A stretch of 64,000 nucleotides of DNA from Heteronotia binoei (GCF_032191835.1 NC_083237.1:18166001-18230000), one strand, 5' to 3'. Counted from the stretch's first letter, positions 6,640-58,275 are shown. Numbers and translations: made by a program. The notes: generated from the sequence alone by a model not told the origin.

Positions 6640-7462
6640 TTAAAATCTGGATCCGCTTCAGGGTTTTAGTACTGACATTCAAAACCTTACGTGGCCTGGG
6701 ACCGAGATACCTGCGGGACTGCCTCTCTCCATATGAGCACCGAAGGCAGCTGCAATCCGCCAACCAACATCTTTTGGTTATCCCTAGCCCAAAGGACGTC
6801 CATCTTGCCTCGACCTTTTTGGCCCTGGCCCCATCCTGGTGGAATCAGCTCCCAGTAGAGATAAGGGTGCTACCAGATTTATTACATTTCCGTAGGGACT
6901 GTAAGATGGAGCTGTTCCTCCAGGCATTTGGGTGAGGCGGGTTGGCGTCCTTTGCTTTATTGCCTATACCATAGACTAGGGGAAGGGACGGTGGCTTAGG
7001 GAAAGGGACCGTGGCTCAGTGGTAGAGCATCTGCTTGGTAAGCAGAAGGTCCCAGGTTCAATCCCTGGAATCTCCACAAAAAGGGTCCAGGCAAATAGGT
7101 GTGAAAAACCTCAGCTTGAGACCGTGGAGAGCCGCTGCCAGTCTGAGTAGACAATAATGACTTTGATGGACCAAGGGTCTGATTCAGTAGAAGGCAGCTT
7201 CATATGTCATATGTAGGTATTTGAATATCCTCCCCCACAGTGATCTGTTAATGAATGATTGTATCTGGGCCACTGATTATACTCCAACCTGCACTATGAG
7301 CCCGCCCTCCTTTGTTATACTGTACTGTGCTGTGTTGCTGTTTTAATTGTATTTTATTGGTTTTATTGTATTGTATTTGCTTGGTTTTATTTGAATGTAA
7401 TCCACCCTGAGCCCGCCTGGGAAAGGGGGGAATATAAATTAACCTAAATAAATAAATAAATA
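6640..7462 (+). mobile_element. L2 LINE 3' end, interrupted by a SINE
   Basis: Translation ..LAPSWWNQLPVEIRVLPDLLHFRRDCKMELFLQAFG*, the same family as ORF 57017..57301. Ends in gtaatccaccctgagccc...(taaa)n. Confidence 0.85.
6990..7214 (+). mobile_element. tRNA-derived SINE (Squam2-like)
   Basis: tRNA-like head gtggctcagtggtagagcatctgcttgg..ggttcaatccctgg (A and B boxes), body, and tail gcagcttcatatgtcatatgt. Reverse copies at 25926-26135 and 58074-58275. Confidence 0.75.
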
Positions 7463-17930: not shown

Positions 17931-19404
17931 GGCAAAACCAGAAGTGATCTCATCACGTCAGAGTAATGTTCCTAGAGTGTAACACTAATGTACTGACATC
18001 ACTTCTGGTTTTGTGTCAGAAGTAACATCATGTATCAGCCTGATGCTGAATTCCACCCCCTCCCCAATTTCCATTCACCAGCCTGTCAAGGAGTGGTAGG
18101 AAAGGGGATCCAGGCCAGGTGGTCTCCAAATATAGTGGGAGACCTGCCCTGCAATGACTACCCCCACTGCAACAGAGCTCATTCTCCCACCCACATTCAC
18201 CTATTGTGTTTATAATCTGTAGCACTGATGAAATCGGAGTCCAGAATTTCCCAGGGAGAGGAGAAGAAGAAAGCAGTGTGTACTGCTGTGTACAGGGCTG
18301 GTATCATATATCTAAATCTGAACTAGAGAGTCATAGAGTGTGGATCAAGAAATGTACAAAATGGGCTAGGGACAAATGGGGGGAGGGGATTTCTCTACAA
18401 CCTGAAGGAAGTCCCAAGTTTGAAGGGGGAGAACGCCTTGAATTCTAAGAAAAGATACATCGTAAATCAAAAAAACTAAAACTCCCTAAAATAACAGAAA
18501 CAGTGCCTGGAGCTCTAAGAAAAGAATGCCTACTGAGCTCTCAGTCACCATGTTGGAGATTGCCAGGCAACCACAACAATACTGTTGAGCCCTCAAAGTC
18601 TTGGTTTTTGTAAAGCATAACCATGGGGGTTGCAACCCCGGTAGCCACTGTGCAACTTGGCCTTCCTCTGTGGCCATCATGCAGCTGGGCCCAGTCACAG
18701 CAGGGTGTGCACCATGCAGCTGGGTCAGACTTTTCCTGGGGCGAGACTACCAAGAGGAGGAAAGGAGGGAAAGTTGAAGTCCGGGGAGCCAATGAAGGTA
18801 GATTGGCTGGTGGGTTGGAAAAAAGAGAAGGAACCACAAATCTTTGCAGGTCCCCCACTTCTTTGATTCTAAACAGCACAGTGGGGTGGGACTACGGTTG
18901 CCAGGTCCTACATGGCTGCCATGGTGGGGGGTGGATCCTGGGTCCTCTCCAGGATCTTCTGCTGTGTGTGCTTTGTGTGCATGGTACAATGACATTGCCC
19001 AGAATTGATGTTATCACTTTGGGGGTGATGCTCTAGTTTCTGGTCAAAACTCTATGGTTTGTAGCCAAATTTGCCATAGAATTTCCCCCAAAAAACTAGA
19101 GCATTGTCATGTGACATTGGTGACATGATGATATCACTTCCCGGCATTGTCATCATATCACCTTTTGGGAGAGTTGGGGGCAGGATTTCCCCCCTGCCAG
19201 CCTGCTGGCTGATGATTGAGAACCGCCACCACAAAGGCAGGAGTTCCCTTGTCCCCAGCGGTGACCATAGGTGGGATGGCATCTAGACTGAGCCAATAAT
19301 CCTGAGGGAAAAGAAGATCAGTTCTTTCTCACCACAAATAAACAATTTTCCATGGAAGATGGACAAATATCTCATATATCCCACTGTGACTGTGTTAATT
19401 AAGA

Positions 19405-25472: not shown

Positions 25473-25925
25473 TTCAAGCAGCAAAGCACATCTATATCTT
25501 TTTGTACTCATTTGCTTGAAAATATGGATAACCCGCACTTCAGGTGGCTTGCCTTGGCAGCACTGAAACACCCCTCAGAACAGAATGTCAAAACACAACA
25601 ACTCCGCAAACAAGCACCAGCAATGGATGTCAGAAAGTCAAAGCGGAACAATCCAAAAACTGCATGAACATGAATAAAACTAAGAGCCAAAAAAATCATG
25701 TGGCAATAAAATCATGTGATAAAATAGCAAGAATTTGGAAACAAAGGAATAGAAGGCAGGGGAAAGGGGGGAGGGAGAGGAGGAGAAGGAGGTGACACCA
25801 GTCACAGTTCAACGAAATGCTTAGGAAATGAACCTAGCACCTAACTTCACAAAATGGTCACCAGGTGAACTTCTAGAAGGAGAGAATTGCAAAGCAGACT
25901 ACAGAGATCAGTTGTTCCCCTGGAG

Positions 25926-26135
25926 AAACATATGAAGCTGCCTTATACTGAGTCAGACCCTCAGTCCATCAAACTCAGTCTTGTCTACTCAGATTGGCAG
26001 TGGCTCTCCAGGTTCTCAAGCTGATGTTTTTCACACCTATTTGCCTGGACCCCTTTTAGTTGGAGATGCCGGGGATTGAACCTGGGGCCTTCTGCTTACC
26101 AAGCAGATCCTCTACCACTGAGACACCATCCCTCC
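25926..26135 (-). mobile_element. Squam2-like SINE
   Basis: acatatgaagctgccttatactgag...ggattgaacctgggg..taccactgag is the reverse complement of the 6990-7214 family. Confidence 0.75.
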
Positions 26136-36508: not shown

Positions 36509-36937
36509 GATTGAAGAAGCAAAGGAGGAGGGAAAACAAAACATTCAGCTGACCAGGCTAAAAGACAGAATGCATATATTCACCAGGCATCGGATTCAGT
36601 GGGAGCTCACAGGAGCACAGCTCCTGAACCTTTCTGAGAGTTCCACCTCCTCCTTCCCACCTTGTCCATTGAATAGTAGGTGCATCTGCATAACAATCCT
36701 GGATGAGCTTCACCACCTATTTTTCTACAAAATGACCCCTGATATTCACTATTGGTCAAGAGAGGCATGTCTTAACCTTTCATTTTTGTTTTACATTGCC
36801 CAATCAGGGTGCAGAAAAATTAAGCTAGGATTAGGGGGAGTTCAGCTGTAGAGACAACCTGCCACTAGAACAAAGTTTTCTTCTCGCTTTGAAAATGAAT
36901 TGCAGGTGGTTGTTTTTTAAAAAGAGAGGTATGGTTC

Positions 36938-38285
36938 GGGAGGGCGAGGCGTCGCTGAGCTATGGTGGATGCATTCAAGTGAAGCTCTGACTCTTCCCCT
37001 CCTAATTCTGGGCGCTTCGCCTACAACACGGACTCAAAATCGTTTTGCAGATGGGAAAATCTCTCAAACCTTAATCCACAGCGAAAGCCAAGATCAAAAA
37101 CAGGGGGAAACCCACAACAGAAGCTTCGCAATCGGTAAGAGATTTTTTCATACCGGGATCTCCCCCTATTCAAATGGGCTCTTCTCCCTCTGCAGATCCT
37201 ATAATGGCCCCTGGGCAAAACGTTACTGATGGCCCACAAGAGGAGGGTGAAGAAGCCCCAATTTGTAGAAGAGATCTGAACATGCTGCGAGAAGACATTC
37301 ATACTTATTTTACAAAAACAGTGGAAGCCTTGTTGGTTCCTGTTAATAAACACATTGATGAAGTGGCTAGTGAACTAGAAGTCACTTCGAAAATGGCGGA
37401 ACGGTCTGCTGAAATATCTTTGTCGTTGCAAGAAGAAGTAAAGCATTTAAAAGCAAAAGAGTCTTTGCTCAACACTAGAATAATATCCTTGGAAAATCGT
37501 TGGAGAGCCCTGAATTTAAAATTTCGAGGGATCAGAGAGGGCGCGGAGGAGAATATGGATCTTGCTGCTTTCCTATCACAATGGTTAGCTCGGGTTTTTA
37601 AACAAGAAGGTGGCGCATCTCCAGCCATTGCTAAAGCTCTGAGGCTTGGACCCTTAGTAATGGCGCGCAAAGAAAAACTGCGGGACATTTAGGTGCAGTT
37701 TCTCTACCCCAAGACAAGAGAAAAAATTCTGAGGGAAGCCCGGCTGCGAGGCTATTTTTTGTTTGAAGGGCAGAAGGTGATTGTGCTACTAGACCTGCCA
37801 CCAGAGGCATTAGAAAAGCAGAAGAGCCTAAAGTTTTTTGCTTCAAAATTGTACCATGCTAATATAAAGTTTCATTGGAGCCGCATCTCAGATATCTTGG
37901 TGTATAAAGGAGGCACGCTGTTTAAAGCTTCGAACATCACTACAGGGAAGTTACTTCTTCAAAATTTGAACTTAAGTCTATCAAAAACAGAAGAGGAAGA
38001 ACTGAGCGCTGATGCTCCCATATCAGAGGAACCACGCATGCCTGAAGCTACTTGAACTCTCAGCTTTATAATTAGATAGTTTAGCATCACCATTTGAACT
38101 TGTGTATTTGAGTTGCTGAGTTGCCATTGCACAAACAATGGAATTAAAGCATTCACCTTTCAAGTTTTTTATTTTTTATAGGATAAAGCATATAATAAGT
38201 TTTATAGAGTGTTAAAAATTAATGAATGATGCATCACATATCCTGGTTTTATAATCATTGATGAATTTTCTTACTTATATTTTTT
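36938..38285 (+). mobile_element. ORF1-only non-autonomous L1 derivative (HAL1-like), 1348 bp
   Basis: TSD aaagagaggtatggttc (36921-36937, 38286-38302); empty site in copy A at ~16308-16325. It carries a complete L1-type ORF1 and no ORF2 sequence. Confidence 0.8.
37174..38055 (+). pseudogene. L1 ORF1p homolog (coiled coil, RRM, CTD), 293 codons with one in-frame TAG
   Basis: ORFs 37174..37692 and 37693..38055 are in the same frame. SLENRWRALNLKFRGIREG resembles the L1 ORF1 RRM start LENRSRRNNLRIxG; ..LRDI*VQF..; LDLPPEALEKQKSLK resembles the CTD motif. Confidence 0.85.
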
Positions 38286-40250
38286 AAAGAGAGGTATGGT
38301 TCTCCTGCAGTTTTTTGGGAGTTAAAAAACAGCCAAAGAATCTGGGTTCTAGGTCTTCATGTTGATAGAGCATGCGTCAACTCTTATGTGGCAGTAGGGA
38401 CAATTCTGTTCAAGCAAATTACCTTTATGCCTTAGAATATCCTAAATATCTCAACATTTACTTTGGTCTGTTTCAGCATTCTGCTTTCAGCTCAGGTGCA
38501 AAGCAAATATTTAGGTATCCCTTATATCTACTGTTTTGTGTTTTTGCCAACCAAATACTATGAAAGCAATTGAATATGTATGGAATGAACTGAGTGCAAT
38601 TTAATATGAATGGAACGCACTGCCGCTTGAGGTGGTGATGGCTGCCAGCGTAGACAGCTTCAAGAGGGGATTGGATAAGCATATGGAGCAGAGGTCAATC
38701 AGCCACAGCATATTGTTGGTACTTTCTGTCTGGGGTATTCTTGGTGCGGGGGGGAGGGCATAGTGGGAGGGCTTCTAGTGTCCTGGCCCCACTGATGGAC
38801 TTCCTGATGACGCCTGGTTTTTTTGGCCACTGTGTGACTACAGAGTGTTGGAATGGATGAGCCATTGGCCTGATTCAGCATGGCTTCTCTTATGTTCTTA
38901 CTTCATGGTTCGTTTTATTAGAGTATTTGTTCCCTGTATATTATCCAAATTTTATCTACTTTTCCAGTAAAATCTGATAAATTTTATATGTCCACTCTCC
39001 TTGTAGATTCCCTTAATTAAATCATACGTAAGGTAGCCAGATTTTGCACTTTAGCTCAGTTGATGAGGAAACAGATGTTTCAATTCTTTCATTAACTGCC
39101 TTGCATTTCTAACACTGGCGCTTAACAGGGTTATTGGTTTTGTATGCTGCTATCTAATTTAGCTTGTACCCTTAGGTTGGCTGATCTTGGATCATAATAA
39201 ATAAAACAAAATGAAATCTTCTGCTGGTTTAAGAAATAAAATATAATTGTTTGTTCTTTTATGTGGCAACCTCAGTTGTGTGATTTTTGTAGGCTCTATG
39301 AAATGCAATTAAAAACTTAGATGCAAAGATCAAATGTTATAGATCTTAAATTAGACCATGGTTGTAGACACTGTGTGCATACAGATGCACACATGTGTAC
39401 TTGAACCAGGGCAAAACTCCCCCCTCCCCACACTATTTCGGCATGAAAAACATTTTAGATATTTCATCACCTTTAAGATATATCACATTAACATTGTTTT
39501 ATTTTTTAAAAAACCTTAAGTTTTATGTTTGATCTGGTCCTCTGAGCAACAGAGGAGCTCATTCCAGAAAAAATATCCAAAGCAAACATTTCTGATTAAT
39601 ACAACTCCCTCCACCCAGTGACATTAACCAGAAAATGACAAATACAACAAACTGGCTGATAGATAGTGTGAGGTAGTGGTGAAATTGTTGGACAAAGAGT
39701 GAGGAGACCTGGGTTCAAGTCTCTCTGCTGCCATTCTATTCACTGAATGACCTTTGTCCAGTTACCTTCTTTTGCTCTCATTTTCCTTATACGTTATTGT
39801 GAAGATCAAATGGAGGAGAGATGATGGACACTGATGGACTGAGATCACTTCTGGTTTTGTGTCAGAAGTAACATCATGTATCAGCCTGATGCTGAATTCC
39901 ACCCCCTCCCCAATTTCCATTCACCAGCCTGTCAAGGGGTGGTAAGAAAGGGGATCCAGGCCAGGTGGTCTCCAAATATAGTGAAAGACCTGCCCTGCAA
40001 TGACTATCCTCACTGCAACAGAGCTCATTCTCCCACCCACATTCACCTATTGTGTTTATAATCTGTAGCACTGATGAAATCGGGGTGAGGAGAGGAGAAG
40101 AAGAAGGCAATGTGTACTGCTGTTTACAGGACTGGTATCATATATCTAAACCTGAACTAGGTCATAGAGTGCGGATCAACAAATCTACAAAATGGGCTAG
40201 GGACGACTGTGGGAGGGGATTTCTCTACAACCTGAAGGAAGTTCCAGGTT

Positions 40251-42393
40251 TGTGTTTTAACAATTTATTGATATCATATCGTTATACAACTTAGTTATTT
40301 CTTAATTATCTCAATATTAATCCGTATGACATTTCAATCCCCCCTCCCTCCAATGTTGTATTTTAACAATTCATTAATAACCTACGGTTACGATGTTTAG
40401 TTATATCTTTTCTATCCCTAACCCATATGATATTTTCAATCCCCCCTCCCTCCGTTATAAGACTTACCCCGAAGTTATATATTTAAATCCAAATATAAAG
40501 GTATCCCAAACCCATCAAAACACACTATCTTTTTCTTCTCATTCATATTAAAAGATTGTCCAATGTCTTTTTACGTTCCATTCTAACTCTATATATTTTT
40601 TAAATTTCTTCCACTCCTTTTTAAACACTTCCAGATCATAGTCTCTCAGAGTTCTTGTTAATTTATCCATCTCGCTCCACGATAAAACTTTCACAATCCA
40701 GTCCCATTTCTCTGGTATTTTTTCTTGTTTCCACAGCTGCGCATACAATGTCCTAGCAGCTGAGAGCAGATACCAAATTAAAGTCCTATCTTCTTTTGGA
40801 AATTTTTCTATTTGTAATCCTATCAGAAAGGTCTCTGCCACTTTCTTGAAGTCATAGCCCAAAATTTTAGAAATTTCTTGTTGTATCATCCGCCAAAAGT
40901 TTTTTGCTTTTTCACAGGTCCAAGCTTTTTGAAAGCCTTTATTTATGATTTTTCCTGCTATGTCCTTGGACCTTAGTTTCACAACGATATCTCTGGGTAG
41001 GCCTTTGTTTTTTGCATATGATGAGTTGACTCTATAGACACTGTCCAGCATACTTCTGAATTTTTCAGGATCCTCTTCTAAGTATTCAGCAATGATTTTC
41101 ACCATGTAGTCCATTAAATCTGTTTCCTCTCTTTCAGGTAGTCCTCTCAGACGCACTTGTGTTTCCATCGATCTGCAGTCGTGGATTGTAACCCTTTCTT
41201 GAAGTTTTAACAAAGTAGAGGCTTGTGTATCCACTTTCTCTTCAACTTGTTTAACTCTGTTTCCCAGTTCATCTTTAAAGCCCTCAATATCTTTCCTAAG
41301 ATCACCAATATCTTTTTTCAGTTCTTTTTTAAGGGCCAATAACATTTTATCCATTCCTTTCATCATCTTGGGTTCTAATACATCAAATTGATTTGCATCT
41401 TGCCAAAAGAATGAGCCCTTGATCGGGTTACTCTCTCTTCTGACATAAAAAACTCACCAAACCTAAAAAGGTCTCCAAATTAAAATTCAACACCAAGTCC
41501 AATAGCTTAGAGTGTGCTGTTTAAAATAAAGCTAATTTCATCTTCCTCCCATCTTCCTGGGCTGAGATATTGATTTTCAACAAATTTGGCTATTTTCCCC
41601 CATTTTAAAATGGCAATCGTTCTTTGTCTATGGTTACACAGAGTCTTAGAGAGGTCCTTCTTCAATCTTGGTTTTAATTCCTTCCTGGTTCAAGTGTAAC
41701 AACTTTGTAATCCTTGTAGGCTTCACCTCATTGGCCAGTAGGTTTTACTTCCCAGTTCAGGTTACTCAGTTCCCGTCTTTCAAATATCGCAGCTTTTGAA
41801 ATTTGCAGATAAGAATGTGGAGTGTTGAACAGAAGAGCCTGCGTCATCAACCTCAGGAATGTAAACAATTTCCTTCTTTTACAAATTCTATTTAAGTCTT
41901 TAGTTTCCAAAAGTTCAAATTTAGCAGGCAGTTATCTCCTTCTCTTTCGCTTCACTTCTATTTATTTTTAATTTTCAAGGCTATTCAGATTAGCTTAAAG
42001 AGTCTCAGGAGCAAAAACATTGAATAACGGTACCTTGTCAGCTTATGCTCTTTCACTTCGGCTTCTTAGTTAGTTATCTTGCAGTTATAAATCAGTCCTT
42101 GAAGTGCCTGGGTTCCGACAGGCTTAGGTCAATTTAATGGCTTTTTAATCCTTTGTAGATGATGGAAGACGCTCCCCCACCGTCGGATCTCAAAGCTCAA
42201 AAAAAGGGGGCTTCAGCCACCTAATTTCAGCTGAGATCAGCAACTAAAGGAGTTTAGGCGTCATCTTTGTCTAATCTCTGGCTGAGATGAGTGAGCAGGG
42301 CCCCCGAAAGGGTCTTTCTGCCCTAAACAAAGGAAAAAAAATCCCCCTTATTTAGAGGGCTGCAGCTCTGCCGTCAGCTCAGACCGGAAGTCC
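40251..42393 (-). mobile_element. Internally deleted mini-L1 (5' UTR, ORF1::ORF2-C-terminus fusion, 3' UTR), 2143 bp
   Basis: 14-bp TSD ggaagttccaggtt (40237-40250, 42394-42407); empty site in copy A at ~18410. 5' end ggacttccgg; 3' end aataaattgttaaaacacaa. Confidence 0.9.
40548..41366 (-). CDS. Chimeric ORF: L1 ORF1 (coiled coil + RRM) fused in frame to the last ~125 aa of ORF2
   Basis: ..QVRLRGLPEREETDL..LPRDIVVKLRSKDIAGKIINKGFQK|AWTCEKAKNFWRMIQQEISKILG..HWTIF*, with no internal stop over 272 aa. The native ATG is probably 41446 (MSEERVTRSR..), now separated by a 1-bp frameshift. Confidence 0.75.
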   Translation of the reverse strand: MMKGMDKMLLALKKELKKDIGDLRKDIEGFKDELGNRVKQVEEKVDTQASTLLKLQERVTIHDCRSMETQVRLRGLPEREETDLMDYMVKIIAEYLEEDPEKFRSMLDSVYRVNSSYAKNKGLPRDIVVKLRSKDIAGKIINKGFQKAWTCEKAKNFWRMIQQEISKILGYDFKKVAETFLIGLQIEKFPKEDRTLIWYLLSAARTLYAQLWKQEKIPEKWDWIVKVLSWSEMDKLTRTLRDYDLEVFKKEWKKFKKYIELEWNVKRHWTIF

Positions 42394-43345
42394 GGAAGTT
42401 CCAGGTTGGAAGGGGGGAAACGCCTTGAATTCTAAGAAAAGATACATCGTAAATCAAAAAAACTAAAACTCCCTAAAATAACAGAATGCCTGGAGCGCTA
42501 AGAAAAGAATGCCTACTGAGCTCTCAGTCACCATGTTGGAGATTGCCAGGCAACCACAACAATACTGTTGAGCCCTCAAAGTCTTGGTTTTTGTATCACT
42601 TTGGGGGTGATGCTCTAGTTTCTGGTCAAAACTCTATGGTTTGTAGCCAATTTTGCCATAGAATTTCCCCAAAAAAACTAGAGCATTGTCATGTGACATT
42701 GGTGACATGATGATATCACTTCTGAGCAATGTCATCATATCACCTTTTGGGCCAGTTGGGGGCAGGATTTCCCCCCTGCCAGCCTGCTGGCTGGTGATTG
42801 AGAAGCGCCTCCACATAGGCAGTGGTTCCCTCATCCCCAGCGATGACCTTAGGTGGGATGGCATCAAGACTGAGCCAATAATCCTGAGGGAAAAGATCAG
42901 TTCTTTCTCACCACAAATAAACAATTTTCCATGGAAAATGGACAAGTATCTCATATATCCCACTGTGACTGTGTTAATTAAGAACATCAGAGAAGCCATG
43001 TTGGATCAGGCCAATGACCCATCCATTCCAACACTCTGTGTCACACAGTGGCCAAAAAAACCAAGTGCCATCAGGAGGTCCCATCAGTGGAACAGGACAC
43101 TAGAAGCCTTCCTACTGTTGCCCCTCTCCCAAGCACCCAGAATACAGAGCATCACTGCCCCAGACAGAGAGTTCCAACAATACACTGTGGCTAACAGCCA
43201 CTGATGGACCTCTGCTCCATATGCTTATCCAATTCCCTCTTGAAGCTGTCTATGCTTATAGCCACGACTACCTCCTGTGGCAGTGAATTCTATGTGTTAA
43301 TCACCCTTTGGGTGAAGTACTTCCTTTTTTCAGTTCTAACCACAC

Positions 43346-47833: not shown

Positions 47834-50800
47834 TCCAGGGCTCTTCAAAGGCTGGCTGGATCCCACTCCATGTCAACTCTGCTTTTTCTGCAAAAACAGA
47901 TGTCATTAGCCAGCAGCTTTGAATGAGAAGACTAGGAACAATCTCTGTTCTGTGCTCTCTAGAGATCATTGGCAAGCAGGGACTACTGAACGCCCGAAAT
48001 GTGGTGCATTGCACAAATAAGAAAATAAATCAGATAAACTTATGGAAACCTGGGCCTTTTGCTTATGCTTTAAAATATCAGTTAGATCTGCAAGCAAACA
48101 TGTGAAGGCTTCATGCCACAGGAAGCTGCAGCTGTCCATTTCAGCCCATTAAGCTTCTATTAAAAGGGCAGGATTTCTTTTCCTGTCCAGCTGACAACTT
48201 TATTCCAGAGTCCTATTAAAATATGCTGCAACCCATAAAAAGGCGGTTAGGAATCCTTGCATGGCATACCAGAGATCTTTGAGGATACTGTAGAGGTGTG
48301 CTCACCACACCCATGTAGCGACTTTGCAAGGGTTGCACAAAGAATCCCTTTGCCTTGCCAGCCACTAGAAATAAACCACTGCGTTTTTATGTTGCAAATA
48401 AATGCTTAAACAATTTCTTTCATAATGATGCAATTACGGTACATTATTATCATCACAAACCAAAATTCATTAAATGCCAAAGAAAAAATCAAAAAGTTAC
48501 TTCACACCACTCTTGTAAGGTAGCACTGTACATTCCACTGTCTCAGTTTTCCTTTGCTTGAAAGACACAGAGAGCCATTCATGCAAGCTGCAAAGTAGCA
48601 TTGTATTGTAAAGTGTGAGCAATTGCCTTTAGCACGGGTTCTGAAGCTGAAAGAAAGCGTCCAGTGGAAGGTGAACAAAACACAGAACTGAACCTAGGAC
48701 CTGTGTAGCCACTGCACCCGTCAGATTTCAATCTGCTACCCACAGAAGGCATCATATACAAGCGTGGTGCTGTCTGCGTCTTTCAAGCAAAAGAGAACTG
48801 AGACAGTGGATTGCAAAGTGCTACCTTACAAGAGTGGTGTGAAGTAACTTTTTGATTTTTCTATGAACATTTAATGAATTTTGGTTTGTGATGGTAATAA
48901 TATAATTGCATCGTTGTGAAAGAAATTGTTTAAGCATTTATTTGCAACTTAAAAACACAGTGGTTTATTTCTATTGTTGGCTAATCAGTACACTGCAGTT
49001 TCCGGTTTGCCCAGCCTCATATTAAGATCAGGCCTGTCCATAATTTTAGAAGTCCAAATCTTCTTCCTCTGAAGAAGCCCAAATGTGTTCATATCCACCC
49101 TCCCAGCCCCCTTTGGTCTGGCCACAGTTCCCATTTCTATACCTTGGCAACAGTCTAAACAGAAGATCCCTCCAGCAGCTCCAAGTCAGCGTCTGGGGAA
49201 GAAGTATGTTCTTCTTTGTTCCTCTTTATTAATGGAGTGAAGGATGGGAAGCACCATATTTTTGCCTTGGCAGAAGAAAGTGTCAGTGTGTGTGTGTGCA
49301 AGGCAAGGCAAGGCAAGGCAAGAGTACTGCTGCATAAGTAGGGCTGCAGTTTTAATCAGTCACCTGCATCAACTGGGGGATCATATATCCCTGGAGGGCA
49401 AAGACACTATCCAACAAAAACAGCATCTCTTGGGACAACAGCTCCTCTCCCTCTTCATTATGGTGTGTGATATTTCTGAAAGACTTTCAAAGACAGAGTA
49501 GTGCTCCGCCACATAATGAATACCTTTGAGAAAAAGAAGATGATGATGATATTGGATTTATACCTTGCTCTCCACTCTGAATCTCAGAGTGGCTCACAAT
49601 CTCCTTTACCTCCTCCCCCCCCCCGCACACACCACAACAGACACCCTGTGAGGTGGGTGGGGCTGAGAGGACTCTCACAGCAGCTATCCTTTCAAGGACA
49701 ACTCTGCAAGGGCTATGGCTGACCCAAGGCCATTTCAGCAGCTGCAAGTGGAGGAGTGGTTAATCAAACCCGGTTGTCCAAGATAAGAGCCCACACACTT
49801 AAGCACTACACCAAACTGGATAAGAACATAAGAGAAGCCATGTTGGATCAAGCCAATGGCCCATCCAGTCCAACACTCTGTATCACACAGTGGTATATAT
49901 TTATACACACACACATATAGACAGTGGCTAATAGCCACTGATGGACCTCTGCTCCATATTTTTATCCAATCCCCAAGCAGCAAAGCAAATCTATATCTTT
50001 TTATACTTATTTGCTTGAAAATATGGATAACCTGCACTTCAGGTGGCTTGCCTTGGTAGCACTGAAACACCCTTCAGAACAGAATGTCAAAACACAACAA
50101 CTCCGCAAACAAGCACCAGCAATGGATGTCATAAAGTCAAAACGGAACAATCCAAAAACTGCATGAACATGAATAAAACTAAGAGCCAAAAAAATCAAGT
50201 GGCAATAAAATCATGTGATAAAATAGCAAGAATTTGAAAAAAAAGGGATAGAAGCCAGGGGAAAGGGGGGAGTGAGAGGAGGAGATGGAGGTGACACCAG
50301 TCACAATTCAACGAAATGCTAAGGAAAAGAACCTAGCACCTAACTTCACAAAATGGGCACCCGGCGAACTTTTATAAGGAGATAATTGCAAAGCAGACTA
50401 CAGAGATCAGTTGTTCCCCTGGAGAAACATATGAACATGGACTTCTGGGCTTTGGTCATGGAGGATTGAGCTGCTTCTCAGCCAAAGAGCAGACCAGAGC
50501 CTCTATTCTGGGCAGAGAAGATGATCCTAACACCTGCTGCCTACTTCTTCCAGATAAGGAGAAGGCCAAGACATGCATATTAAGTTCTGAGGGGATTTAC
50601 TTTGGCTGATGACGAGTTCCAATGGGGTTCCTTTTTGGCTTTGAAGAGTTCCTGGAGAAGGATTGCATTCAACTGTCTACAGAGGATTTCTGAGGTCATT
50701 AAATTGACTTAAATTCACCAAGATTCAAGGCTTCTTTGGAACTGATCAACATTAATCTTTGAAAAGAGCAGTGTGCATAAGGATAGCGGCAAAAAAGGTA

Positions 50801-53800
50801 AAAGATCTATATCTAACACTCCGGGACTAATATAAGACCAATTTAAAATAAAAACAAAGGTCTAGATCCAGTTATATTATCTTAAACTAAGGAAGATAAA
50901 GGAGGGGGTAATTTTGGGACTAATAAAATTGGAGGAATAAGGATAAAAGTGGAAAAACAAACTTTGTTTTGAATACCTGCGGTCGGGTCAGACAACCCCC
51001 TCCGAAATAGAACTGCTGACTTGGTGAAGATATCACAGGAAATGGCATCACAGAAACAACATGAGACTTCTTAACCATTGAAAACGAGACTTCTTGGCAA
51101 GAGAGGAAGGAAATAGCCATTAAGAGAAGGGAAAACTGCAAGCCTCCCAGCCCTCTCTAGGACTTTAAATCATAGAGAAGCACTGGCGGCCATTAAAAGA
51201 AGGTCAAAATTTTAAAAATTAATCAAAAGAAAATGGGACTTTAAAAAATAGTGGAGCCGGCAGATATCATCATTAAAAAGTGAAATCTATTGGATTATAT
51301 GTTTTGAATCAATTTTGGTGCAGTTCAGGAGAAAAAAGGAAAAACTTTTTTAAAGGGACAGAAAAGTCTCGAGCGCCATTTTGAAGAAATAAAAACTTTT
51401 AAAAATTAATATTTGGACTTAGGAGCCTCTGGGAATGGTGATTTTAGGCTCATATAAAAGGGCATGCTCCAGTCTACAAGACTGTGTAATTGAAAATTGA
51501 ATTTGTGAGGTCAACATTGGCGCCTATTTAAACAATGGGCGGGCAGTGATGTCTATGCAAAAACCAGGAGCAAAGCAGATTCGAACGAGGGCTGGGTCAC
51601 TTGAAGAAGCAAAAATGGCTAAATGGCAGGAGGCAATTGATGCTATGGAAGCAAGACTGGTAAAAATAATAAAGGAGTCATTAATACAATGCAAGAAGGA
51701 AATAAAAAAAACAGAATCGAATGCAGAAGAAGTCAAAAAAGAAATTAAAAAAGAAATTGAAGATCTCAGAAAGGATTCTCAAGCAGTGTTAAAGAAAGTT
51801 CAGGAGGTGGAAGAAAAGGTGAAAGGCCAAGATTTAAGAATAGACACAGTGGATTCCACTATTCAAAAAATGCAGGAGAAAGCAGTACTACAAGATTGTA
51901 AAGTAATGGAAAATCAGATACGATTGAGAGGGGTGCCTGAATCTGTTGAGACTGATTTAAGGACATATATTATAAAAATCATTGCTGAATTTTTGGATGA
52001 AAACCCAGATGAAACCAACTATTTTTATGACTACATTTATAGGGCAAATTTGGATTATGCCAGAAAAAAACAAATTACCAAGAGATGTCGTAGTAAGATT
52101 TGTGACAAAAGATATGGTGGGGAAAATTTTGAGCAAACAATTTGAAAAAACATTGGAGGTGGATGGCAGCAGTGTAAGAATCATGAAAGAATTGCCAAGG
52201 AAAGTCATCAACGACAGGAGATTGCACAAAAAATTGCCAGAAAAGCTGAGAGAAAATGAAATGAGATACAGATGGATACTTCCAGAGGGTTTAAGTTTTG
52301 AATACAAAGGAAAGAGATTCACAATTACAAACACCCAGGAAATGACAAAGTTCTTGGGGGATTGTAAAGAATTTGGAGAAACAGATTAAGAATAAAAAAT
52401 CATTATGGATTACAAATTAATATCTTGAAATGTAAATGGACTAAATTCACCACAAAAAAGAAGGGCAACCTTTCATTGGACTGGGAAACAAAAATGTAAT
52501 ATAATTTGTCTACAAGAAGTACATATTAAGCAAATGGATTACAATTTTTTATGGAATAAACAACTTGGTATGGAATTTTGTTCATTGGCCAAGGAGAAAA
52601 AAGGGGCATGGTTTTTTATATTAAACAAGATTTAGACCCAAAATTGATTTTTTTTAAAGACGATAATGGCAGATATATTGCGGTGGAAGTGACGTTGAAT
52701 TATAAAAGAACTTAGTTCTTGGGAGTGTGTGCCCCAAATGGAGCAAAAGACTTCTTTTTTAAAGACATTATACAACAATTAGACCAAGTGGTGTATGAGC
52801 AAATTATGATAATGGGAGACTTTAATGGAACAGTTAAAAATATTTTGGACAGGTCTGGAAAAAAAAATAATGAAGGGAAGCTACCAAAGTCATTTTTTGA
52901 TTTGGTAAAACAAGAGAGTTTGGAAGACATTTGGAGGGAATTTAACCCCAAAGAATGTGATTATACTTTCTTTTCAGCAAGGCATAATTCTTTTTCGAGA
53001 ATTGATATGTTATGGATTACAAAGGATCTTGGACTATTAACAAAGAAAATAGAGATACTTTCTAAAATAGGGGCAGACTACAATCCAATAATGTGGTCTG
53101 CAAAACCAGTGAAAAAGACTATAATGGCGGATAAATGAAGATTTGCTACAGAAGCAGGAGGTAGTGGCGTCTCTGGAAAAGGAGACTAAATTCTTCTTTC
53201 AAATAAATGAAAAAGAAGACACTCAATTTCAAATTGTGTGGGGTGCCTATAAAGTGGTAATGAGGGGCATTTTAATTACATTGAATAGTAAAAAGAAAAG
53301 AGCGAAAAATAAGCAACTGCTGGACGTTCAGAAAGAAATTGGAATAAAGGAGAAGGAGCTTAAAAAATGACCTGGGAAAAAGAAAAATATAAGGGAGATT
53401 ACAATATTACAAAGCCAATTGAGACATTTGTTGAATAAAGAAGTGGAATGGAACTTAGAAAGACTTCAAAAGAAATCTTTTGAAGGAGCGAATTAACCTG
53501 GAAAATACTTGGCATGGCAAATGAAGAAAAAAAGGGAGAATAAAGTTATTAATAAAATTGTATCGGGAGGAAAGGACATTGTTGATCAGGAAGGAACTAA
53601 AAGAGAATTTTATAAATACTATGCCAAGCTATTTAAAAGTCAAAAGGTGGATAGAAAAAAAATTGATGCATATCTACAGAAAATTAAGGTAAATCCCTTA
53701 ACAGAAAATATGGAGAAGGTACTGAATGAACCAATCGAAAAAGGAGAAATAGAGGTGGCGATTAATTCAATGAAGATAGGAAAAGCACCTGGTCCAGATG

Positions 53801-54843
53801 GCTTTACGGTAAAATTTTATAAAGTCCTCGCGGAGGCGTCATTACCAAAACTTTAGAAATTGATGAATATAAGAATAGATGGGAAAATTCCTAATATATG
53901 GAAAGAAGCAGTAATTTTGTTGATACCAAAAGAAGACAGAGATGCTACAAATGTAAAAAACTATAGACCAATTTCATTACTTAACAATAATTATAAAATA
54001 TATGCCAGAATTTTAGCAGAACGCCTGAAACAGCATTTGAACAATTTTATTAAAGAGCAAACAGGATTTCTTCCCAGCAGGCAAATTAGAGATAATATCA
54101 GAACAGTTATAGATATTATTGAATATTATGAGAAAGATCCTGAAAAAGAAGAAGCATTATTTTTTGCTGACGCAGAGAAAGCATTTGACAATGTGCATTG
54201 GGACTTCATGTTTGCCGTGATAGAGAAACTGAGATTGGGAGAAGATTTTATAAGAATGGTGAAGGCGATATATACTGAACAACAAGCAAGGCTCTGTGTA
54301 AATGCAGATTTGACAGAAAAAATGATAATTAGTAAAGGAATAAGTCAAGGTTGCCCTCTATCTCCATTGATATTTATAATGACTTTAGAGGTTTTGCTAA
54401 TGCAAATTCAAGAAGATAAAGAGATAGAGGGACTGAAATTGAAAGGTTTTTCTTATAAATACAGAGCGTTTGCAGATGATGTAATGTTTATAAATGAAAA
54501 TCCCACTCATGTAAAACCACTGTTGCTTCGTAATATACAATATGGAGAATTGACAGGCTTTTATATAAACAAAGAAAAATCAAAAATGTTGTGCAAAAAA
54601 AATGTTAAAAAGTAAACAGGAAGAACTACAGAGGCTAACAGAGTGTGAAGTTACTTCCAAAGTAAAATATTTAGGTGTGGAAATAACAACAAAAAATCTG
54701 AACTTGTACAAAAATAATTATGAAAAGCTTTGGCGTAAGATCGATGGAGATTTGATAAAATGGAATAAGTTGAATTTGTCTATGCTGGGCAGAATTTCTG
54801 CAATCAAGATGAATGTCTTACCGGGAATTATGTTCCTGTTTCA

Positions 54844-56366
54844 TAAGAACGTAGGAACATAAGAGAAGCCATGTTAGATCAGGCCAATGTCCCATCCAGT
54901 CCAACACTCTGTNNNNNNNNNNNNNNNNNNNNNNNNNNNNNNNNNNNNNNNNNNNNNNNNNNNNNNNNNNNNNNNNNNNNNNNNNNNNNNNNNNNNNNNN
55001 NNNNNNNNNNNNNNNNNNNNNNNNNNNNNNNNNNNNNNNNNNNNNNNNNNNCTGTGGCAGTGAATTCCACATGTTAATCACCCTTTGGGTAAAGAAGTAC
55101 TTCCTTTTATCCGTTTTAAACTGTCTGCTCAGCAATTTCATCGAATGCCCACGAGTTCTTGTATTGTGAGAAAGGGAGAAAAGTACTTCTTTCTCTACTT
55201 TCTCCATCCCATGCATTATCTTGTAAACCTCTATCATGTCATCCTGCAGGCGACGTTTCTCCAAGCTAAAGAGCCCCAAGCGTTTCAGCCTTTCTTCATA
55301 GGGAAAGTGTTCCAGCCCTTTAATCATTCTAGTTGCCCTTTTCTGGACTTTCTCCAATGCTATAATATCCTTTTTGAGGTGCAGCGACCAGAACTGCACA
55401 CAGCACTCCAAATGAGACCGCACCATCGATTTATACAGGGGCATTATGATACTGGCTGATTTGTTTTCAATTCCCTTCCTAATAATTCCCAGCATGGCGT
55501 TGGCCTTTTTTATTGCAAACACACACTGTCTTGATATTTTCAATGAGTTATCTACCATGACCCCAAGATCTTTCTCTTGGTCAGTCTCTGCCAGTTCACA
55601 CCCCATCAACTTGTATTTGTAGCTGGGATTCTTGTCCCCAATGTGCATTACTTTGCACTTGGCCACATTGAACCACATCTGCCACGTTGACGCCCACTCA
55701 CCCAGCCTCAACAGATCTCTTTGGAGTTCCTCACAATCCTCTCTGGTTCTCACCACCCTGAACAATTTAGTGTCATCCGCAAACTTGGCCACTTCACTGC
55801 TCACTCCCAACTCTAAATCATTTATGAACAAGTTAAAGAGCATGGGACCCAGTACCAAGCCCTGCGGCACCCCACTGCTTACCGTCCTCCACTGTGAAGA
55901 CTGCCCATTTATACTCACTCTCTGCTTCCTATTACTCAGCCAGTTTTTGATCCACAAGAGGACCTGTCCTTTTACTCCATGACTTTCAAGCTTTCTAAGG
56001 AGCCTTTGATGAGGAACTTTATCAAAAGCTTTCTGGAAGTCAAGGTAAACAACATCTATCGGGTCTCCTTTGTCCACATGTTTGTTCACCCCCTCAAAGA
56101 AATGTAACGGGTTAGTGAGGCAAGATCTTCCCTTACATAACCCATGCTGAGTCTTCCTCAATAACCCATGTTCAACAATGTGCCTACTCATTCTGTCCTT
56201 GATAATGCTTTCTACCAACTTTCCCGGTATTGAAGTCAGACTCCCACAGTGGACAACTCTGATCCATTACCCGGTAGAAAAATAGCAGCCAACCCTTCAT
56301 CTCTTTGAGATGAGACCTCCCGAACCAGAGACATTTCATCTCCTGTCGGCTTTCCTCCAAGATTTA
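54844..56366 (-). mobile_element. CR1 LINE 3' part (RT domain plus 3' UTR) nested in L1 ORF2
   Basis: ORF 54818..56218(-): YLDFQKAFDKVPH, SGVPQG, KFADD, FNVAKCKVMH. TSD gtttca (54838-54843, 56367-56372). Confidence 0.95.
54913..55051. other. Assembly gap or masked run of 139 N
   Basis: Run of n inside the CR1 3' UTR. Confidence 1.
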
Positions 56367-57009
56367 GTTTCAAACAATTCCAATAGTGAAAGACAACAAA
56401 CAATTTAATAAATGGCAAAGGAAACTTTCAGAATTTGTATGGGTCAGGAAAAAACCAAGAATTAAAATGAAAATCTTGACTGATGCAAAAGAAAGGGGAG
56501 GATTTCAACTGCCTAATTTGAAGTTGTATCATGATGCAGTATGCCTGGTGTGGATTAAGGAATGGATGACATTACTAAATAGAAAATTACTAGCACTAGA
56601 AGGCCATGGAAATGTCTTTAGTTGGAATATTTACATGTATTATGGGAAAAATAAGATGGAAGGGTTTTTTCGCATCATTATATAAGAAGCAATCTGTTAA
56701 ATACTTGGCCAAAATATAAAAGATATGGGGATGAGAGGAAACCACTTTGGATTGTGCCAACAGAAGAAATAAAATTGTATTCAGATACTAAAGAAGATAA
56801 GTGGTTATCATATAAACAAGCTTTTAAAAATACATGGAGGAAAGGTGGAATTAAAATCGGCTGAAGAATTACAGTATAAATATAATTGGTTTCAATTGCA
56901 ACAAATTAAAGTTTGCTTGAACAGGACATCAAGAATGATGGAATAAGACAAGAACAAACAGAATTGGAGAGAATGCTGTTTGGTGAAAATGAAAAATTGA
57001 TTTCAAGAA

Positions 57010-57494
57010 CTTAAAGGTGCTGGTTATCACCTTTAAAGCCCTATATGGCTTGGGACCTGTCTACCTGAAGGACCGTCTTTCCTCGCATGTTCCCCAGAGA
57101 GTACTGAGGTCGGGAACACAAAATCTCCTTACTGTCCCTGGGCCGAAAGAAGCCCGCTTGAAATCCACCAGAGAAAGGGCTTTCTCTGTTATGGCCCCTA
57201 CATGGTGGAATCAGTTGCCGGAAGAGGTGAGGGCCCTGCGGGACCTTCTTCAGTTCCGCAGGGCCTGTAAGACGACCCTCTTCCGGCTAGCCTATACCTA
57301 GCTTGAGAACTTAATGCAACTTGCCAGATTTCTTTTATATATATTTCGAATATTTATTAATATTTATGGTTTTATCTGTTTTATCTGTTTTAAATGTTTA
57401 TTCCCTTATATGTTTAAATATTGCTTAATTTTATGCTGGATCTATTGTTGGAAGCCGCCCTGAGCCACCCGTGGGAAGGGCGGGATATAAATTC

Positions 57495-57525
<31 letters not shown>

Positions 57526-57526
57526 A
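57010..57526 (+). mobile_element. L2 LINE 3' end nested in L1 ORF2
   Basis: LVITFKALYGLGPVYLKDRL..APTWWNQLPEEVR..; (taaa)n tail. The L1 frame resumes after it (ENEKLISR..LLKWSTEDE). Confidence 0.9.
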
Positions 57527-58073
57527 TTATTGAAATGGTCTACAGAAGATGAAATAGTTAAATCTCAAATGATAAAATGGGCGATAAATATAAATAAGGA
57601 AATACAGATGGAGTCATGGGAATACTTATGGAAGAATTCTATGAAAATATTGACATGTTACAATATTAAAGAAAATTATTTCAAAATGTTATATAGGTGG
57701 TATATGACACCCAAGAAACCAGCAAAAATGAATAATCAGGTGTTGGATAGATGTTGGAAATGCAAAAAACAAGAAGGATCTTTCTACCATATGTGGTGGA
57801 CTTGTGAAAAGGCAAAACAATTTTGGCAAATGATTCAGCAAGAGATTTCAAAAATTTTGGGATATAATATCAAGAAGGCACCAGACATTTTTCTGTTGGG
57901 CTTACAAATGGAAATATTTCCAAAACAAGATAGAACAATAATTTGGTATATGCTTTCAGCTGCTCGGACATTATATGCGCAGATGTAGAAGCAAGATAAA
58001 ATACCAGAAAAGTGGAAATGCACTTTAAAAGTTATGCATTGGCGTGAAATGGACAAGCTTACAAGAATCTTAT

Positions 58074-58275
58074 GAACATATGAAGCTGCCTTATACTGAA
58101 TCAGACCTTCAATCCATCAAAGTCAGTCTTGTCTACTCACTGGCAGTGGCTCTCCAGAGTCTCAAGCTGAGGTTTTTTACACCTATTTGCCTGGACCCTT
58201 TTTAGTTGGAGATGCCGGGGATTGAACCTGGGGCCTTCTGTTTACCAAGAAGATCCTCTACCATTGAGACACCAT
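58074..58275 (-). mobile_element. Squam2-like SINE (paralog of 25926-26135)
   Basis: acatatgaagctgccttatactgaatcagacc...ggattgaacctgggg. Confidence 0.75.

What the first reader, a model, noticed from the sequence alone, without database searches (positions are those of the whole stretch)
40237..42407. TSD-flanked mini-L1 encoding an in-frame ORF1::ORF2-C-terminus fusion protein
Seen: 2143 bp with both authentic ends (ggacttccgg 5'; aataaa plus A-rich 3') and a perfect 14-bp TSD, absent from copy A. About 4 kb (ORF1 CTD, endonuclease, RT) is missing, and the junction (..NKGFQK|AWTCEKAK..) keeps a 272-aa open frame to the ORF2 stop. Inference: either a post-insertion deletion that is in frame by chance (1 in 3), or a non-autonomous family or spliced L1 RNA producing an RNA-binding ORF1 coiled-coil/RRM joined to the ORF2 C-terminal segment, which could act as a parasite or dominant-negative of L1. 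A 1-bp frameshift near the native ATG (41446) shows this copy has begun to decay.
Basis: partly seen in the sequence, partly recalled or inferred. Interest (0 to 1): 0.75.

Follow-up and report, generated by a model that had tools for sequence, protein, structure and literature searches.

The report
Internally deleted gecko L1 retrocopy
This is a 2.1-kb copy of a gecko L1 jumping gene that kept both ends but lost its middle 4 kb, leaving an open hybrid reading frame probably by chance; it is an ordinary dead copy unless other copies with the same joint exist elsewhere in the genome, which I could not test.

Summary
A 2143-bp L1 lies on the minus strand at 40251-42393. It is flanked by a perfect 14-bp target-site duplication, and the paralogous copy A of a segmental duplication has a precise empty site at 18407-18420. 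The 272-aa ORF joins the L1 ORF1 N-part to the last 126 residues of ORF2.

Both domains at the joint are cut. The ORF1 RRM loses its last strand and the whole C-terminal domain. The ORF2 zinc knuckle keeps only its last cysteine.

In-window relatives share a 4-nt patch (TGGA) at the joint. The ORF2 side lies in two invariant Trp codons, so no AG acceptor is possible and splicing is rejected.

My best reading is a one-off internal deletion, made by template switching at insertion or lost afterwards, with a frame that is open by a 1-in-3 chance.

The decisive test is a count of this junction across the genome. Earlier notes of this scan list three more TSD-bounded, internally deleted L1s in this genome, one of them a similar 2-kb ORF1/ORF2-tail fusion. 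A mobile family therefore stays open at about 25%.

The parts
40237..40250 (.). Left copy of the 14-bp target-site duplication (3' side of the element)
   Evidence: Exact 14-mer found only twice in the window. Aligned to the empty site.
40251..42393 (-). The whole internally deleted L1 copy, 2143 bp
   Evidence: Bounded by the TSD. Absent from paralogous copy A.
40251..40547 (-). 3'UTR of 297 nt. AATAAA lies at 40264-40269 and there is no poly(A) tail. It holds two imperfect units of about 100 nt, each ending in the same terminal motif.
40548..40922 (-). ORF2 C-terminal tail (fusion residues about 148-272) with its stop codon. It starts at the last Cys of the CCHC knuckle.
   Evidence: tblastn and blastn to the in-window ORF2 tails at 57785-58096 and 3786-4149. 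Profile hit to human ORF2p 1110-1259 at E=5e-20.
40919..40925 (-). Deletion junction. TGGA (40919-40922) is shared by the ORF1 and ORF2 sites of the in-window relatives.
   Evidence: Four-way DNA alignment; sequence extracts.
40923..41366 (-). ORF1 N-part of the fusion ORF: a coiled-coil helix (residues 2-68) and an RRM that runs through helix alpha-2. Strand beta-4 and the C-terminal domain are missing.
   Evidence: Profile hit to human ORF1p 2ykp/2yko at E about 1e-13. AlphaFold pLDDT 95 with its secondary structure. Foldseek top hits are 2ykp, 2yko and 2w7a.
41367..41446 (-). Region upstream of the first in-frame ATG. The ATG at 41444-41446 is in a different frame that closes after 23 codons. 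The fusion frame stays open for 29 codons upstream without an ATG.
   Evidence: Three-frame translation.
41447..42393 (-). 5'UTR of 947 nt. Its first roughly 40 nt resemble the 5' terminus of the L1 at 50438.
42394..42407 (.). Right copy of the 14-bp target-site duplication (5' side of the element)
   Evidence: The target and the element's 5' end share ACTTCC.
18407..18420 (.). Empty (pre-insertion) site in paralogous copy A
   Evidence: A single copy of the target with 2 mismatches; the flanks align on both sides.

Best explanation
This is a one-off, internally deleted copy of an autonomous gecko L1.

Shown:
- An L1 was inserted by target-primed reverse transcription into copy B of a segmental duplication, after that duplication arose. 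The marks are a 14-bp TSD and an intact empty site in copy A.
- The copy keeps the 5'UTR, the first half of ORF1, the last 126 codons of ORF2 and the 3'UTR.
- It lacks about 4 kb: the end of the ORF1 RRM, the ORF1 C-terminal domain, the endonuclease, the reverse transcriptase and most of the zinc knuckle.

Inferred:
- The two breakpoints were joined at a short patch of matching letters (TGGA in the relatives available).
- One route, which I put at about 40%, is that the reverse transcriptase switched from the ORF2 tail to ORF1 while copying a full-length RNA during insertion.
- The other route, about 28%, is a large deletion after insertion.
- Both breakpoints fall after the first base of a codon, so the frames join. 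That is a 1-in-3 accident.
- The copy encodes no enzyme, so it cannot copy itself. The hybrid protein, if it is made at all, has both flanking domains cut through.
For: - TSD and empty site.
- The two halves are L1 ORF1 and the L1 ORF2 tail.
- The breakpoints ignore domain borders. The RRM stops after helix alpha-2. The in-window ORF2 has its knuckle cysteines and histidine just upstream of the joint, and the fusion keeps only the last Cys.
- The ORF1 and ORF2 sites of the relatives share TGGA, set in a wider A-rich patch of similarity.
- No protein covering both halves exists among 1.8 billion representatives. All 150 listed hits match one half only. Nothing was found in the word-indexed collection or by exact look-up.
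- The same window holds two other aberrant TSD-flanked L1 insertions that are absent from copy A. Both have intact 5' ends and are 3'-truncated without a tail: 36921-38302 and 50438-58071. Irregular reverse transcription by this L1 therefore seems frequent.
- Literature: internally deleted L1 insertions arise in cell-culture assays, and cis preference explains why no L1-derived deletion family had been seen (PMC3414825). Large deletions are a major route of LINE decay in fish and were reported in a lizard (PMC3381678).
Against: - The decisive copy-number test could not be run.
- Earlier notes of this scan, which I could not check, list another TSD-flanked 2-kb mini-L1 with an open ORF1/ORF2-tail fusion on another piece of this genome (s1-335893). 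Two more TSD-bounded internally deleted L1s are also listed (s1-340795, s1-330243). If the first shares this junction, the copy belongs to a family.
- The ORF is still open over 301 codons, and all nearly invariant residues of both halves are kept. That fits a young copy, but it would also fit a recently active lineage.
- The element ends in a specific motif without poly(A). In other LINE clades such 3' ends go with recognition of the 3' end by the reverse transcriptase, which makes mobilisation in trans easier.
- The microhomology was read from diverged relatives: 38% amino-acid identity in ORF1 and 81% nucleotide identity in the tail. The true parent was not available.
Confidence: 0.68

Rival explanations
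1. It is a member of a mobile, non-autonomous L1 deletion family (an 'L1 SIDE'). A source copy carrying this deletion is transcribed from its intact 5'UTR, and its RNA is copied into new sites by the proteins of autonomous L1s, which recognise the retained 3' end.
For: - Both termini, a 947-nt 5'UTR and a 297-nt 3'UTR are retained, and the TSD is clean.
- The ORF shows little decay.
- The specific, tail-less 3' terminus could allow recognition in trans.
- Earlier notes describe a second 2-kb ORF1/ORF2-tail mini-L1 and two other TSD-bounded deleted L1s in about 48 Mb of this genome scanned so far. I did not check them.
Against: - There is no second copy of the junction or of the 5'UTR/ORF1 part in this 64-kb window.
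- No fusion-type protein is in any collection searched.
- The other noted mini-L1s differ in size and build (1199, 2036 and 3469 letters). That fits repeated independent deletions better than one family.
- L1 cis preference disfavours RNAs that do not encode ORF2p (PMC3414825).
- The follow-up on s1-335893 judged that copy an ordinary internally deleted retrocopy, silent and with no sign that its hybrid protein is used.
Confidence: 0.25
2. It is a retrotransposed spliced L1 mRNA, like a SpIRE. A donor in ORF1 was spliced to an acceptor in the ORF2 tail, and the spliced RNA was then inserted.
For: The copy has a TSD and both ends, as SpIREs do (PMC5860796). In the in-window L1, a GT lies one base beyond the shared patch on the ORF1 side.
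Against: - At all five registers allowed by the junction, the bases before the ORF2-derived part are GG, GT, TG, GG or GA. None is AG.
- Those bases lie in two Trp codons that are conserved in every relative and in human ORF2p.
- No register gives GT on the ORF1 side in the relative available.
- Known SpIREs splice within the 5'UTR or from the 5'UTR into ORF1, not from ORF1 into the ORF2 tail (PMC5860796).
Confidence: 0.03
3. The fusion gene is kept because its protein works. For example, it could enter ORF1p trimers through its coiled coil and poison L1 particles, as a dominant negative serving either the host or the parasite.
For: The predicted coiled-coil helix (residues 2-68) is intact. 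[quoted passage not shown] The frame is open for 272-301 codons.
Against: - This is a single copy inside a recent TE insertion that the paralogous locus lacks.
- The upstream ATG is out of frame, and the 5'UTR holds seven ATGs.
- The RRM, the ORF1 C-terminal domain and the zinc knuckle are truncated or lost.
- No homologous fusion protein is found anywhere.
- I could obtain no expression data.
Confidence: 0.03
4. It is an assembly artefact: a full-length L1 collapsed between two similar short stretches during assembly.
For: The window contains an N run at 54913-55051, and the region is rich in repeats.
Against: The joint rests on only about 4 nt of identity, far too little to mislead an assembler. 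The flanks, the TSD and the paralogous empty site are coherent.
Confidence: 0.01

Closest known systems
Internally deleted L1 insertions seen in cultured-cell retrotransposition assays (cited in PMC3414825, its reference 38) and among 'uncharacterized' species-specific insertions with TSDs (PMC2912911)
   Same: They are TSD-flanked L1 copies with authentic ends and a missing middle. They are thought to arise when the reverse transcriptase leaves its template and resumes elsewhere. They are dead on arrival.
   Different: This is a reptile L1 lineage without a poly(A) tail. The breakpoints here happen to join ORF1 and ORF2 in frame. The time of the deletion, at or after insertion, is not established.
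SpIREs, spliced integrated retrotransposed elements of human L1 (PMC5860796)
   Same: They are L1 copies with an internal deletion, TSDs and both ends, and they cannot sustain further rounds of retrotransposition.
   Different: SpIRE deletions are bounded by splice donor and acceptor sites and lie in the 5'UTR or between the 5'UTR and ORF1. Here the ORF2 side cannot be an AG acceptor, and the deletion runs from the ORF1 RRM to the ORF2 zinc knuckle.
SIDEs: short internally deleted non-LTR elements such as the R2 and R2/R1 SIDEs of Drosophila, TbRIME and Ag-Sponge (PMC3414825)
   Same: The 5' and 3' ends of a LINE are joined by an internal deletion. A template jump or DNA-level recombination has been proposed as their origin.
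   Different: SIDEs are multi-copy lineages that persist for millions of years and mostly lack coding sequence. Here only one copy is known and 272 codons remain. In 2012 that paper stated that an L1 SIDE had not been observed.
HAL1 'half-L1' elements of mammals (named in PMC5753468 among others; their architecture is given from my own knowledge)
   Same: They are L1 derivatives that lack the enzymatic ORF2.
   Different: HAL1 keeps a complete ORF1 and no ORF2 sequence, and it forms families. This copy has a truncated ORF1 fused to the ORF2 tail.
Truncated ORF1 proteins that suppress L1 in trans (PMC5605252)
   Same: The N-terminal and coiled-coil part of ORF1p is kept without the C-terminal domains, so co-assembly with intact ORF1p is conceivable.
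   Different: Those proteins arise from stop codons in otherwise full-length human loci and were tested experimentally. Here nothing shows that the protein is made, and part of the N-terminus is out of frame with the upstream ATG.
Decay of LINEs by large deletions in non-mammalian vertebrates (stickleback, PMC3381678, which cites the same for a lizard); internally deleted helena copies in Drosophila (PMC2330053)
   Same: Young LINE copies lose kilobase-size internal segments.
   Different: Those studies describe populations of fragments. Most such deletions remove a terminus, whereas this copy keeps both termini and a TSD.

Membership tests
L1-clade LINE copy inserted by target-primed reverse transcription | ORF1p-type protein: coiled coil followed by a non-canonical RRM | tested here: met
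   A profile of the N-part hits human ORF1p 2ykp/2yko at E about 1e-13. The AlphaFold model (pLDDT 95) is a long helix plus beta-alpha-beta-beta-alpha. Its top fold matches are 2ykp, 2yko and 2w7a. The RRM is incomplete (no beta-4) and the C-terminal domain is absent.
L1-clade LINE copy inserted by target-primed reverse transcription | ORF2p sequence (endonuclease, reverse transcriptase, C-terminal segment) | tested here: inconclusive
   Only the last 126 residues are present. They match human ORF2p at about 1110-1259 with E=5e-20. The endonuclease and reverse transcriptase are absent from this copy. They are present in the related in-window L1 at 52719-54615.
L1-clade LINE copy inserted by target-primed reverse transcription | Target-site duplication and a precise empty site | tested here: met
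   A 14/14 TSD. A single target in copy A at 18407-18420.
L1-clade LINE copy inserted by target-primed reverse transcription | 3' poly(A) tail | tested here: not met
   The copy ends in a 13-nt A-rich motif after AATAAA. The same motif ends an internal 3'UTR repeat unit, so it appears to be the lineage's normal terminus.
SpIRE (spliced L1 retrocopy) | Deletion bounded by a GT donor and an AG acceptor of the parent RNA | tested here: not met
   No register gives AG on the ORF2 side, which lies in conserved TGG TGG codons. No register gives GT on the ORF1 side in the available relative. The true parent was not available.
SpIRE (spliced L1 retrocopy) | Deletion within the 5'UTR or from the 5'UTR into ORF1 | tested here: not met
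   The deletion runs from the ORF1 RRM to the ORF2 zinc knuckle.
SIDE / non-autonomous LINE deletion family | 5' and 3' termini of the parent LINE retained around an internal deletion | tested here: met
   The 5' end matches the terminus of the L1 at 50438. For the 3' terminus motif.
SIDE / non-autonomous LINE deletion family | Several copies with the same junction at different sites, each with its own TSD | not testable with these tools
   There is one copy in the window. No collection on hand holds this genome.
HAL1 (half-L1) | Complete ORF1 and no ORF2-derived sequence | tested here: not met
   ORF1 is cut about 83 residues before its end, judged against the in-window L1 ORF1. An ORF2 tail is present.

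The most novel reading that the evidence does not exclude
The copy is one member of an active, trans-mobilised L1 deletion family in geckos. That would be an 'L1 SIDE', a class reported as never observed for L1 because of cis preference (PMC3414825). Its RNA would keep the promoter-bearing 5'UTR and the tail-less 3' recognition end. Its conserved coiled-coil fusion protein might interfere with the parent L1.
Probability: 0.22. Interest if true: 0.5.

Novelty: new member of a known kind. Interest (0 to 1): 0.2.

Why it matters
As a single dead copy it matters little. It documents one more way in which L1 copies are born defective or decay.

The pattern around it is more useful. One 64-kb window holds three TSD-flanked, 5'-complete but otherwise aberrant L1 insertions. 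Earlier notes list three more internally deleted ones elsewhere in the genome. This suggests that gecko L1 reverse transcription often starts or resumes at internal sites of its RNA.

If the junction proved to be multi-copy, it would be an L1-derived deletion family that escapes cis preference. That would bear on how reptile L1s choose their templates.

Tried and rejected
- **Pfam.** A scan of the fusion ORF gave only coiled-coil noise. Only 5 of 32 ORF1-type relatives touch Transposase_22, and weakly. I established identity through profiles against solved structures instead.
- **Direct search of solved structures.** phmmer of the ORF against the PDB found nothing.
- **Word-indexed protein searches.** Searches with the whole ORF and with the tail alone found nothing. 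The exact-protein look-up found no contig.
- **Exhaustive HMMER search.** It returned only distant relatives (at most 55% identity), each matching one half. No close parent could be fetched, so the breakpoints could only be read against in-window relatives.
- **Sequencing runs.** There are therefore no copy-number, expression or assembly checks.
- **Junction search in public collections.** Those collections hold viruses, metagenomes and prokaryotes, and could hardly contain a gecko L1.
- **Earlier findings by sequence and by relatives.** Both look-ups came back blank.
- **Combined alignment.** An alignment of both halves (A6) misaligned the ORF1 relatives, so I did not use it for folding. Only the ORF1 part was folded.
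- **Mending the copy.** I did not try to mend the frame near the upstream ATG or build any consensus.
Full report
**What is there**

The element lies on the minus strand. The 14-mer GGAAGTTCCAGGTT occurs exactly twice in the 64-kb window, at 40237-40250 and 42394-42407, against 0.05 matches expected by chance. The two copies bracket 2143 bp.

The window holds a tandem segmental duplication. Copy A runs 4532-25936 and copy B 26726-50435, with 16.8 kb aligned at 92.9% identity. In copy A the flanks of the element meet at a single copy of the target, 18407-18420, which differs from the copy B target at 2 of 14 positions. The chain of A/B alignments shows the signature of a TSD-type insertion here: an overlap of 16 in A and a gap of 2141 in B. 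The element is therefore a true insertion by target-primed reverse transcription into copy B, made after the duplication.

**Anatomy in the element's own orientation**

| Part | Length | Window coordinates |
|---|---|---|
| 5'UTR | 947 nt | 42393 down to 41447 |
| ATG in another frame (that frame closes after 23 codons) | 3 nt | 41446-41444 |
| 272-codon ORF | 819 nt with stop | 41366 down to 40548 |
| 3'UTR | 297 nt | 40547 down to 40251 |

The frame of the 272-codon ORF is open for 301 codons from stop to stop. I could not verify it, because no close parent is available. I describe the break only.

**The two halves**

*ORF1 part.*
- An exhaustive HMMER search of 1.8 billion representatives gave 392 hits. 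Every one of the 150 listed matches either residues about 3-155 or residues about 130-272. None matches both.
- A profile of residues 1-146 with 31 relatives hits the solved human L1 ORF1p trimer (2ykp and 2yko, E about 1e-13) and 2ldy.
- An AlphaFold model of this part is confident (pLDDT 95). It shows a helix over residues 2-68, then strand, helix, strand, strand, helix.
- Its best fold matches in the PDB are the human ORF1p trimer and its RRM, with E of 5e-3 to 5e-2 and probability 0.94-1.00.
- The profile alignment puts the last ORF1 residue at the end of RRM helix alpha-2. Strand beta-4 and the whole C-terminal domain are missing. That is about 83 residues, judged against the in-window L1 ORF1.

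*ORF2 part.*
- A profile of residues 147-272 hits human ORF2p at about 1110-1259 of 1275, with E=5e-20.
- The related in-window ORF2 reads Cys-x2-Cys-x10-His-x4-Cys just before this point. The fusion retains only the final Trp-Thr-Cys.

Both domains next to the joint are cut through. That is what a random break predicts. It is not what a selected domain fusion predicts.

**The junction**

No close parent could be found, so I used three in-window relatives:
- the ORF1 and ORF2 of the L1 at 50438-58071 (38% amino-acid identity in ORF1; 65% amino-acid and about 82% nucleotide identity in the tail);
- an ORF2 fragment at 3786-4230 (about 81% nucleotide identity).

In the four-way alignment, ORF1 homology runs up to and into TTGGA, and ORF2 homology starts at TGGAC. 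The shared TGGA lies at window 40919-40922, which is also where the blastn matches to both ORF2 relatives stop. Around it the two sites share a looser A-rich resemblance.

I tested splicing register by register. The two bases before the ORF2-derived part would be GG, GT, TG, GG or GA. They belong to two Trp codons, which can only be TGG. These codons are conserved in the 30-sequence alignment and in human ORF2p. On the ORF1 side no register gives GT in the relative available. Canonical splicing is therefore rejected. That conclusion is firm for the acceptor and tentative for the donor.

**Ends**

The first 40 nt resemble the 5' terminus of the L1 at 50438. That terminus is itself defined by a 10-bp TSD and an empty site in copy A. 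The 5' end is therefore authentic.

At the 5' junction the target and the element share ACTTCC. Such microhomology is usual for 5'-end attachment.

The 3' end has AATAAA 13 nt before the end and no poly(A) tail. The terminal motif recurs at the end of an internal 3'UTR repeat unit of about 100 nt. This suggests that a tail-less terminus is normal for this lineage.

**When and how the middle was lost**

Three scenarios share the same junction chemistry. Only the copy number, or the orthologous site in other individuals or species, can separate them:
- (a) a template switch by the reverse transcriptase during insertion;
- (b) a large deletion after insertion;
- (c) descent from a deleted source copy, that is, a family.

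*For (a).* The same window holds two further TSD-flanked L1 insertions with complete 5' ends that lack their 3' ends right at the TSD. A later deletion cannot produce a truncated end that abuts a TSD, so they were made that way at insertion. This shows that this L1's reverse transcription often engages internal RNA sites. Internally deleted L1 insertions are known from cell-culture assays (PMC3414825).

*For (b).* Large deletions are a main route of LINE decay in fish and were reported in a lizard (PMC3381678).

*For (c).* Earlier notes of this scan, which I could not check, list:
- a TSD-flanked 2-kb mini-L1 with an open ORF1/ORF2-tail fusion on another piece of this genome (s1-335893), judged by its follow-up to be a microhomology deletion with a chance open frame;
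- a 1.2-kb mini-L1 joining the 5'UTR to a zinc-knuckle ORF (s1-340795);
- a 3.5-kb TSD-bounded L1 without ORF1, endonuclease or reverse transcriptase (s1-330243).

Their different sizes and builds argue for a recurrent process rather than one family. The two 2-kb fusions still deserve a direct comparison. Cis preference of ORF2p argues against (c) (PMC3414825). The specific tail-less 3' end argues mildly for it.

My split is: (a) about 40%, (b) about 28%, (c) about 25%, and the remainder for splicing, a selected protein or an artefact.

**The protein**

The open frame needs no special explanation. Both breaks fall after the first base of a codon, which is a 1-in-3 event, and both halves were open before the break.

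[quoted passage not shown] Here, however:
- the upstream ATG is out of frame;
- the 5'UTR has seven ATGs;
- the RNA-binding parts are truncated;
- no similar fusion exists in any protein collection searched;
- I could obtain no expression data.

**Limits**

**Verdict**

This is a new member of a known kind, of low interest unless the junction proves to be multi-copy.

Noticed in passing
window 50425-58081: An L1 on the plus strand has a complete 5' end (three extra bases, CAT, before the usual terminus) and a frameshifted ORF1. It carries endonuclease and reverse-transcriptase pieces and a nested minus-strand RT element that contains the N run. It ends abruptly inside the ORF2 tail at 58071, with no 3'UTR or tail. 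It is nevertheless flanked by a 10-bp TSD (AACATATGAA at 50425-50434 and 58072-58081), and copy A has a precise empty site near 25925-25934. It is therefore a 3'-truncated, tail-less L1 retrocopy.
   Followed up: partly
window 36921-38302, 40251-42393 and 50438-58071: Three TSD-flanked L1 insertions, all absent from copy A and all with complete 5' ends, are each aberrant. Two are 3'-truncated and one is internally deleted. This suggests frequent internal priming or template switching by gecko L1 reverse transcriptase.
   Followed up: partly
window 4532-25936 and 26726-50435: A tandem segmental duplication of about 22-24 kb, with 16.8 kb aligned at 92.9% identity. It has many copy-specific gaps of 0.3-2.9 kb. 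Copy B's homology ends exactly where the L1 at 50438 begins.
   Followed up: partly
window 40251-40462: The mini-L1 3'UTR holds two imperfect tandem units of about 100 nt. Each starts with a G-rich run and ends in the same motif as the element's very 3' end. This looks like an old duplication of the terminal unit.
   Followed up: partly
window 77-4230: A tandem array of about 152-nt units derived from the ORF2 tail (fusion residues about 204-259). A 5'-truncated ORF2 fragment that still has the full zinc knuckle lies at about 3786-4230. It is about 81% identical to the mini-L1 tail.
   Followed up: no
window 42384-42399: At the 5' junction the target end and the element start form a perfect 8-bp tandem (CCGGAAGT twice), which is 6 nt of microhomology between the target and the L1 5' end.
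   Followed up: no
window 7176-7201, 25934-25959 and 58082-58107: Three copies of a SINE-like start motif (GAAGCTGCCTTATACTGA...). The L1 at 50438 inserted immediately upstream of one of them.
   Followed up: no
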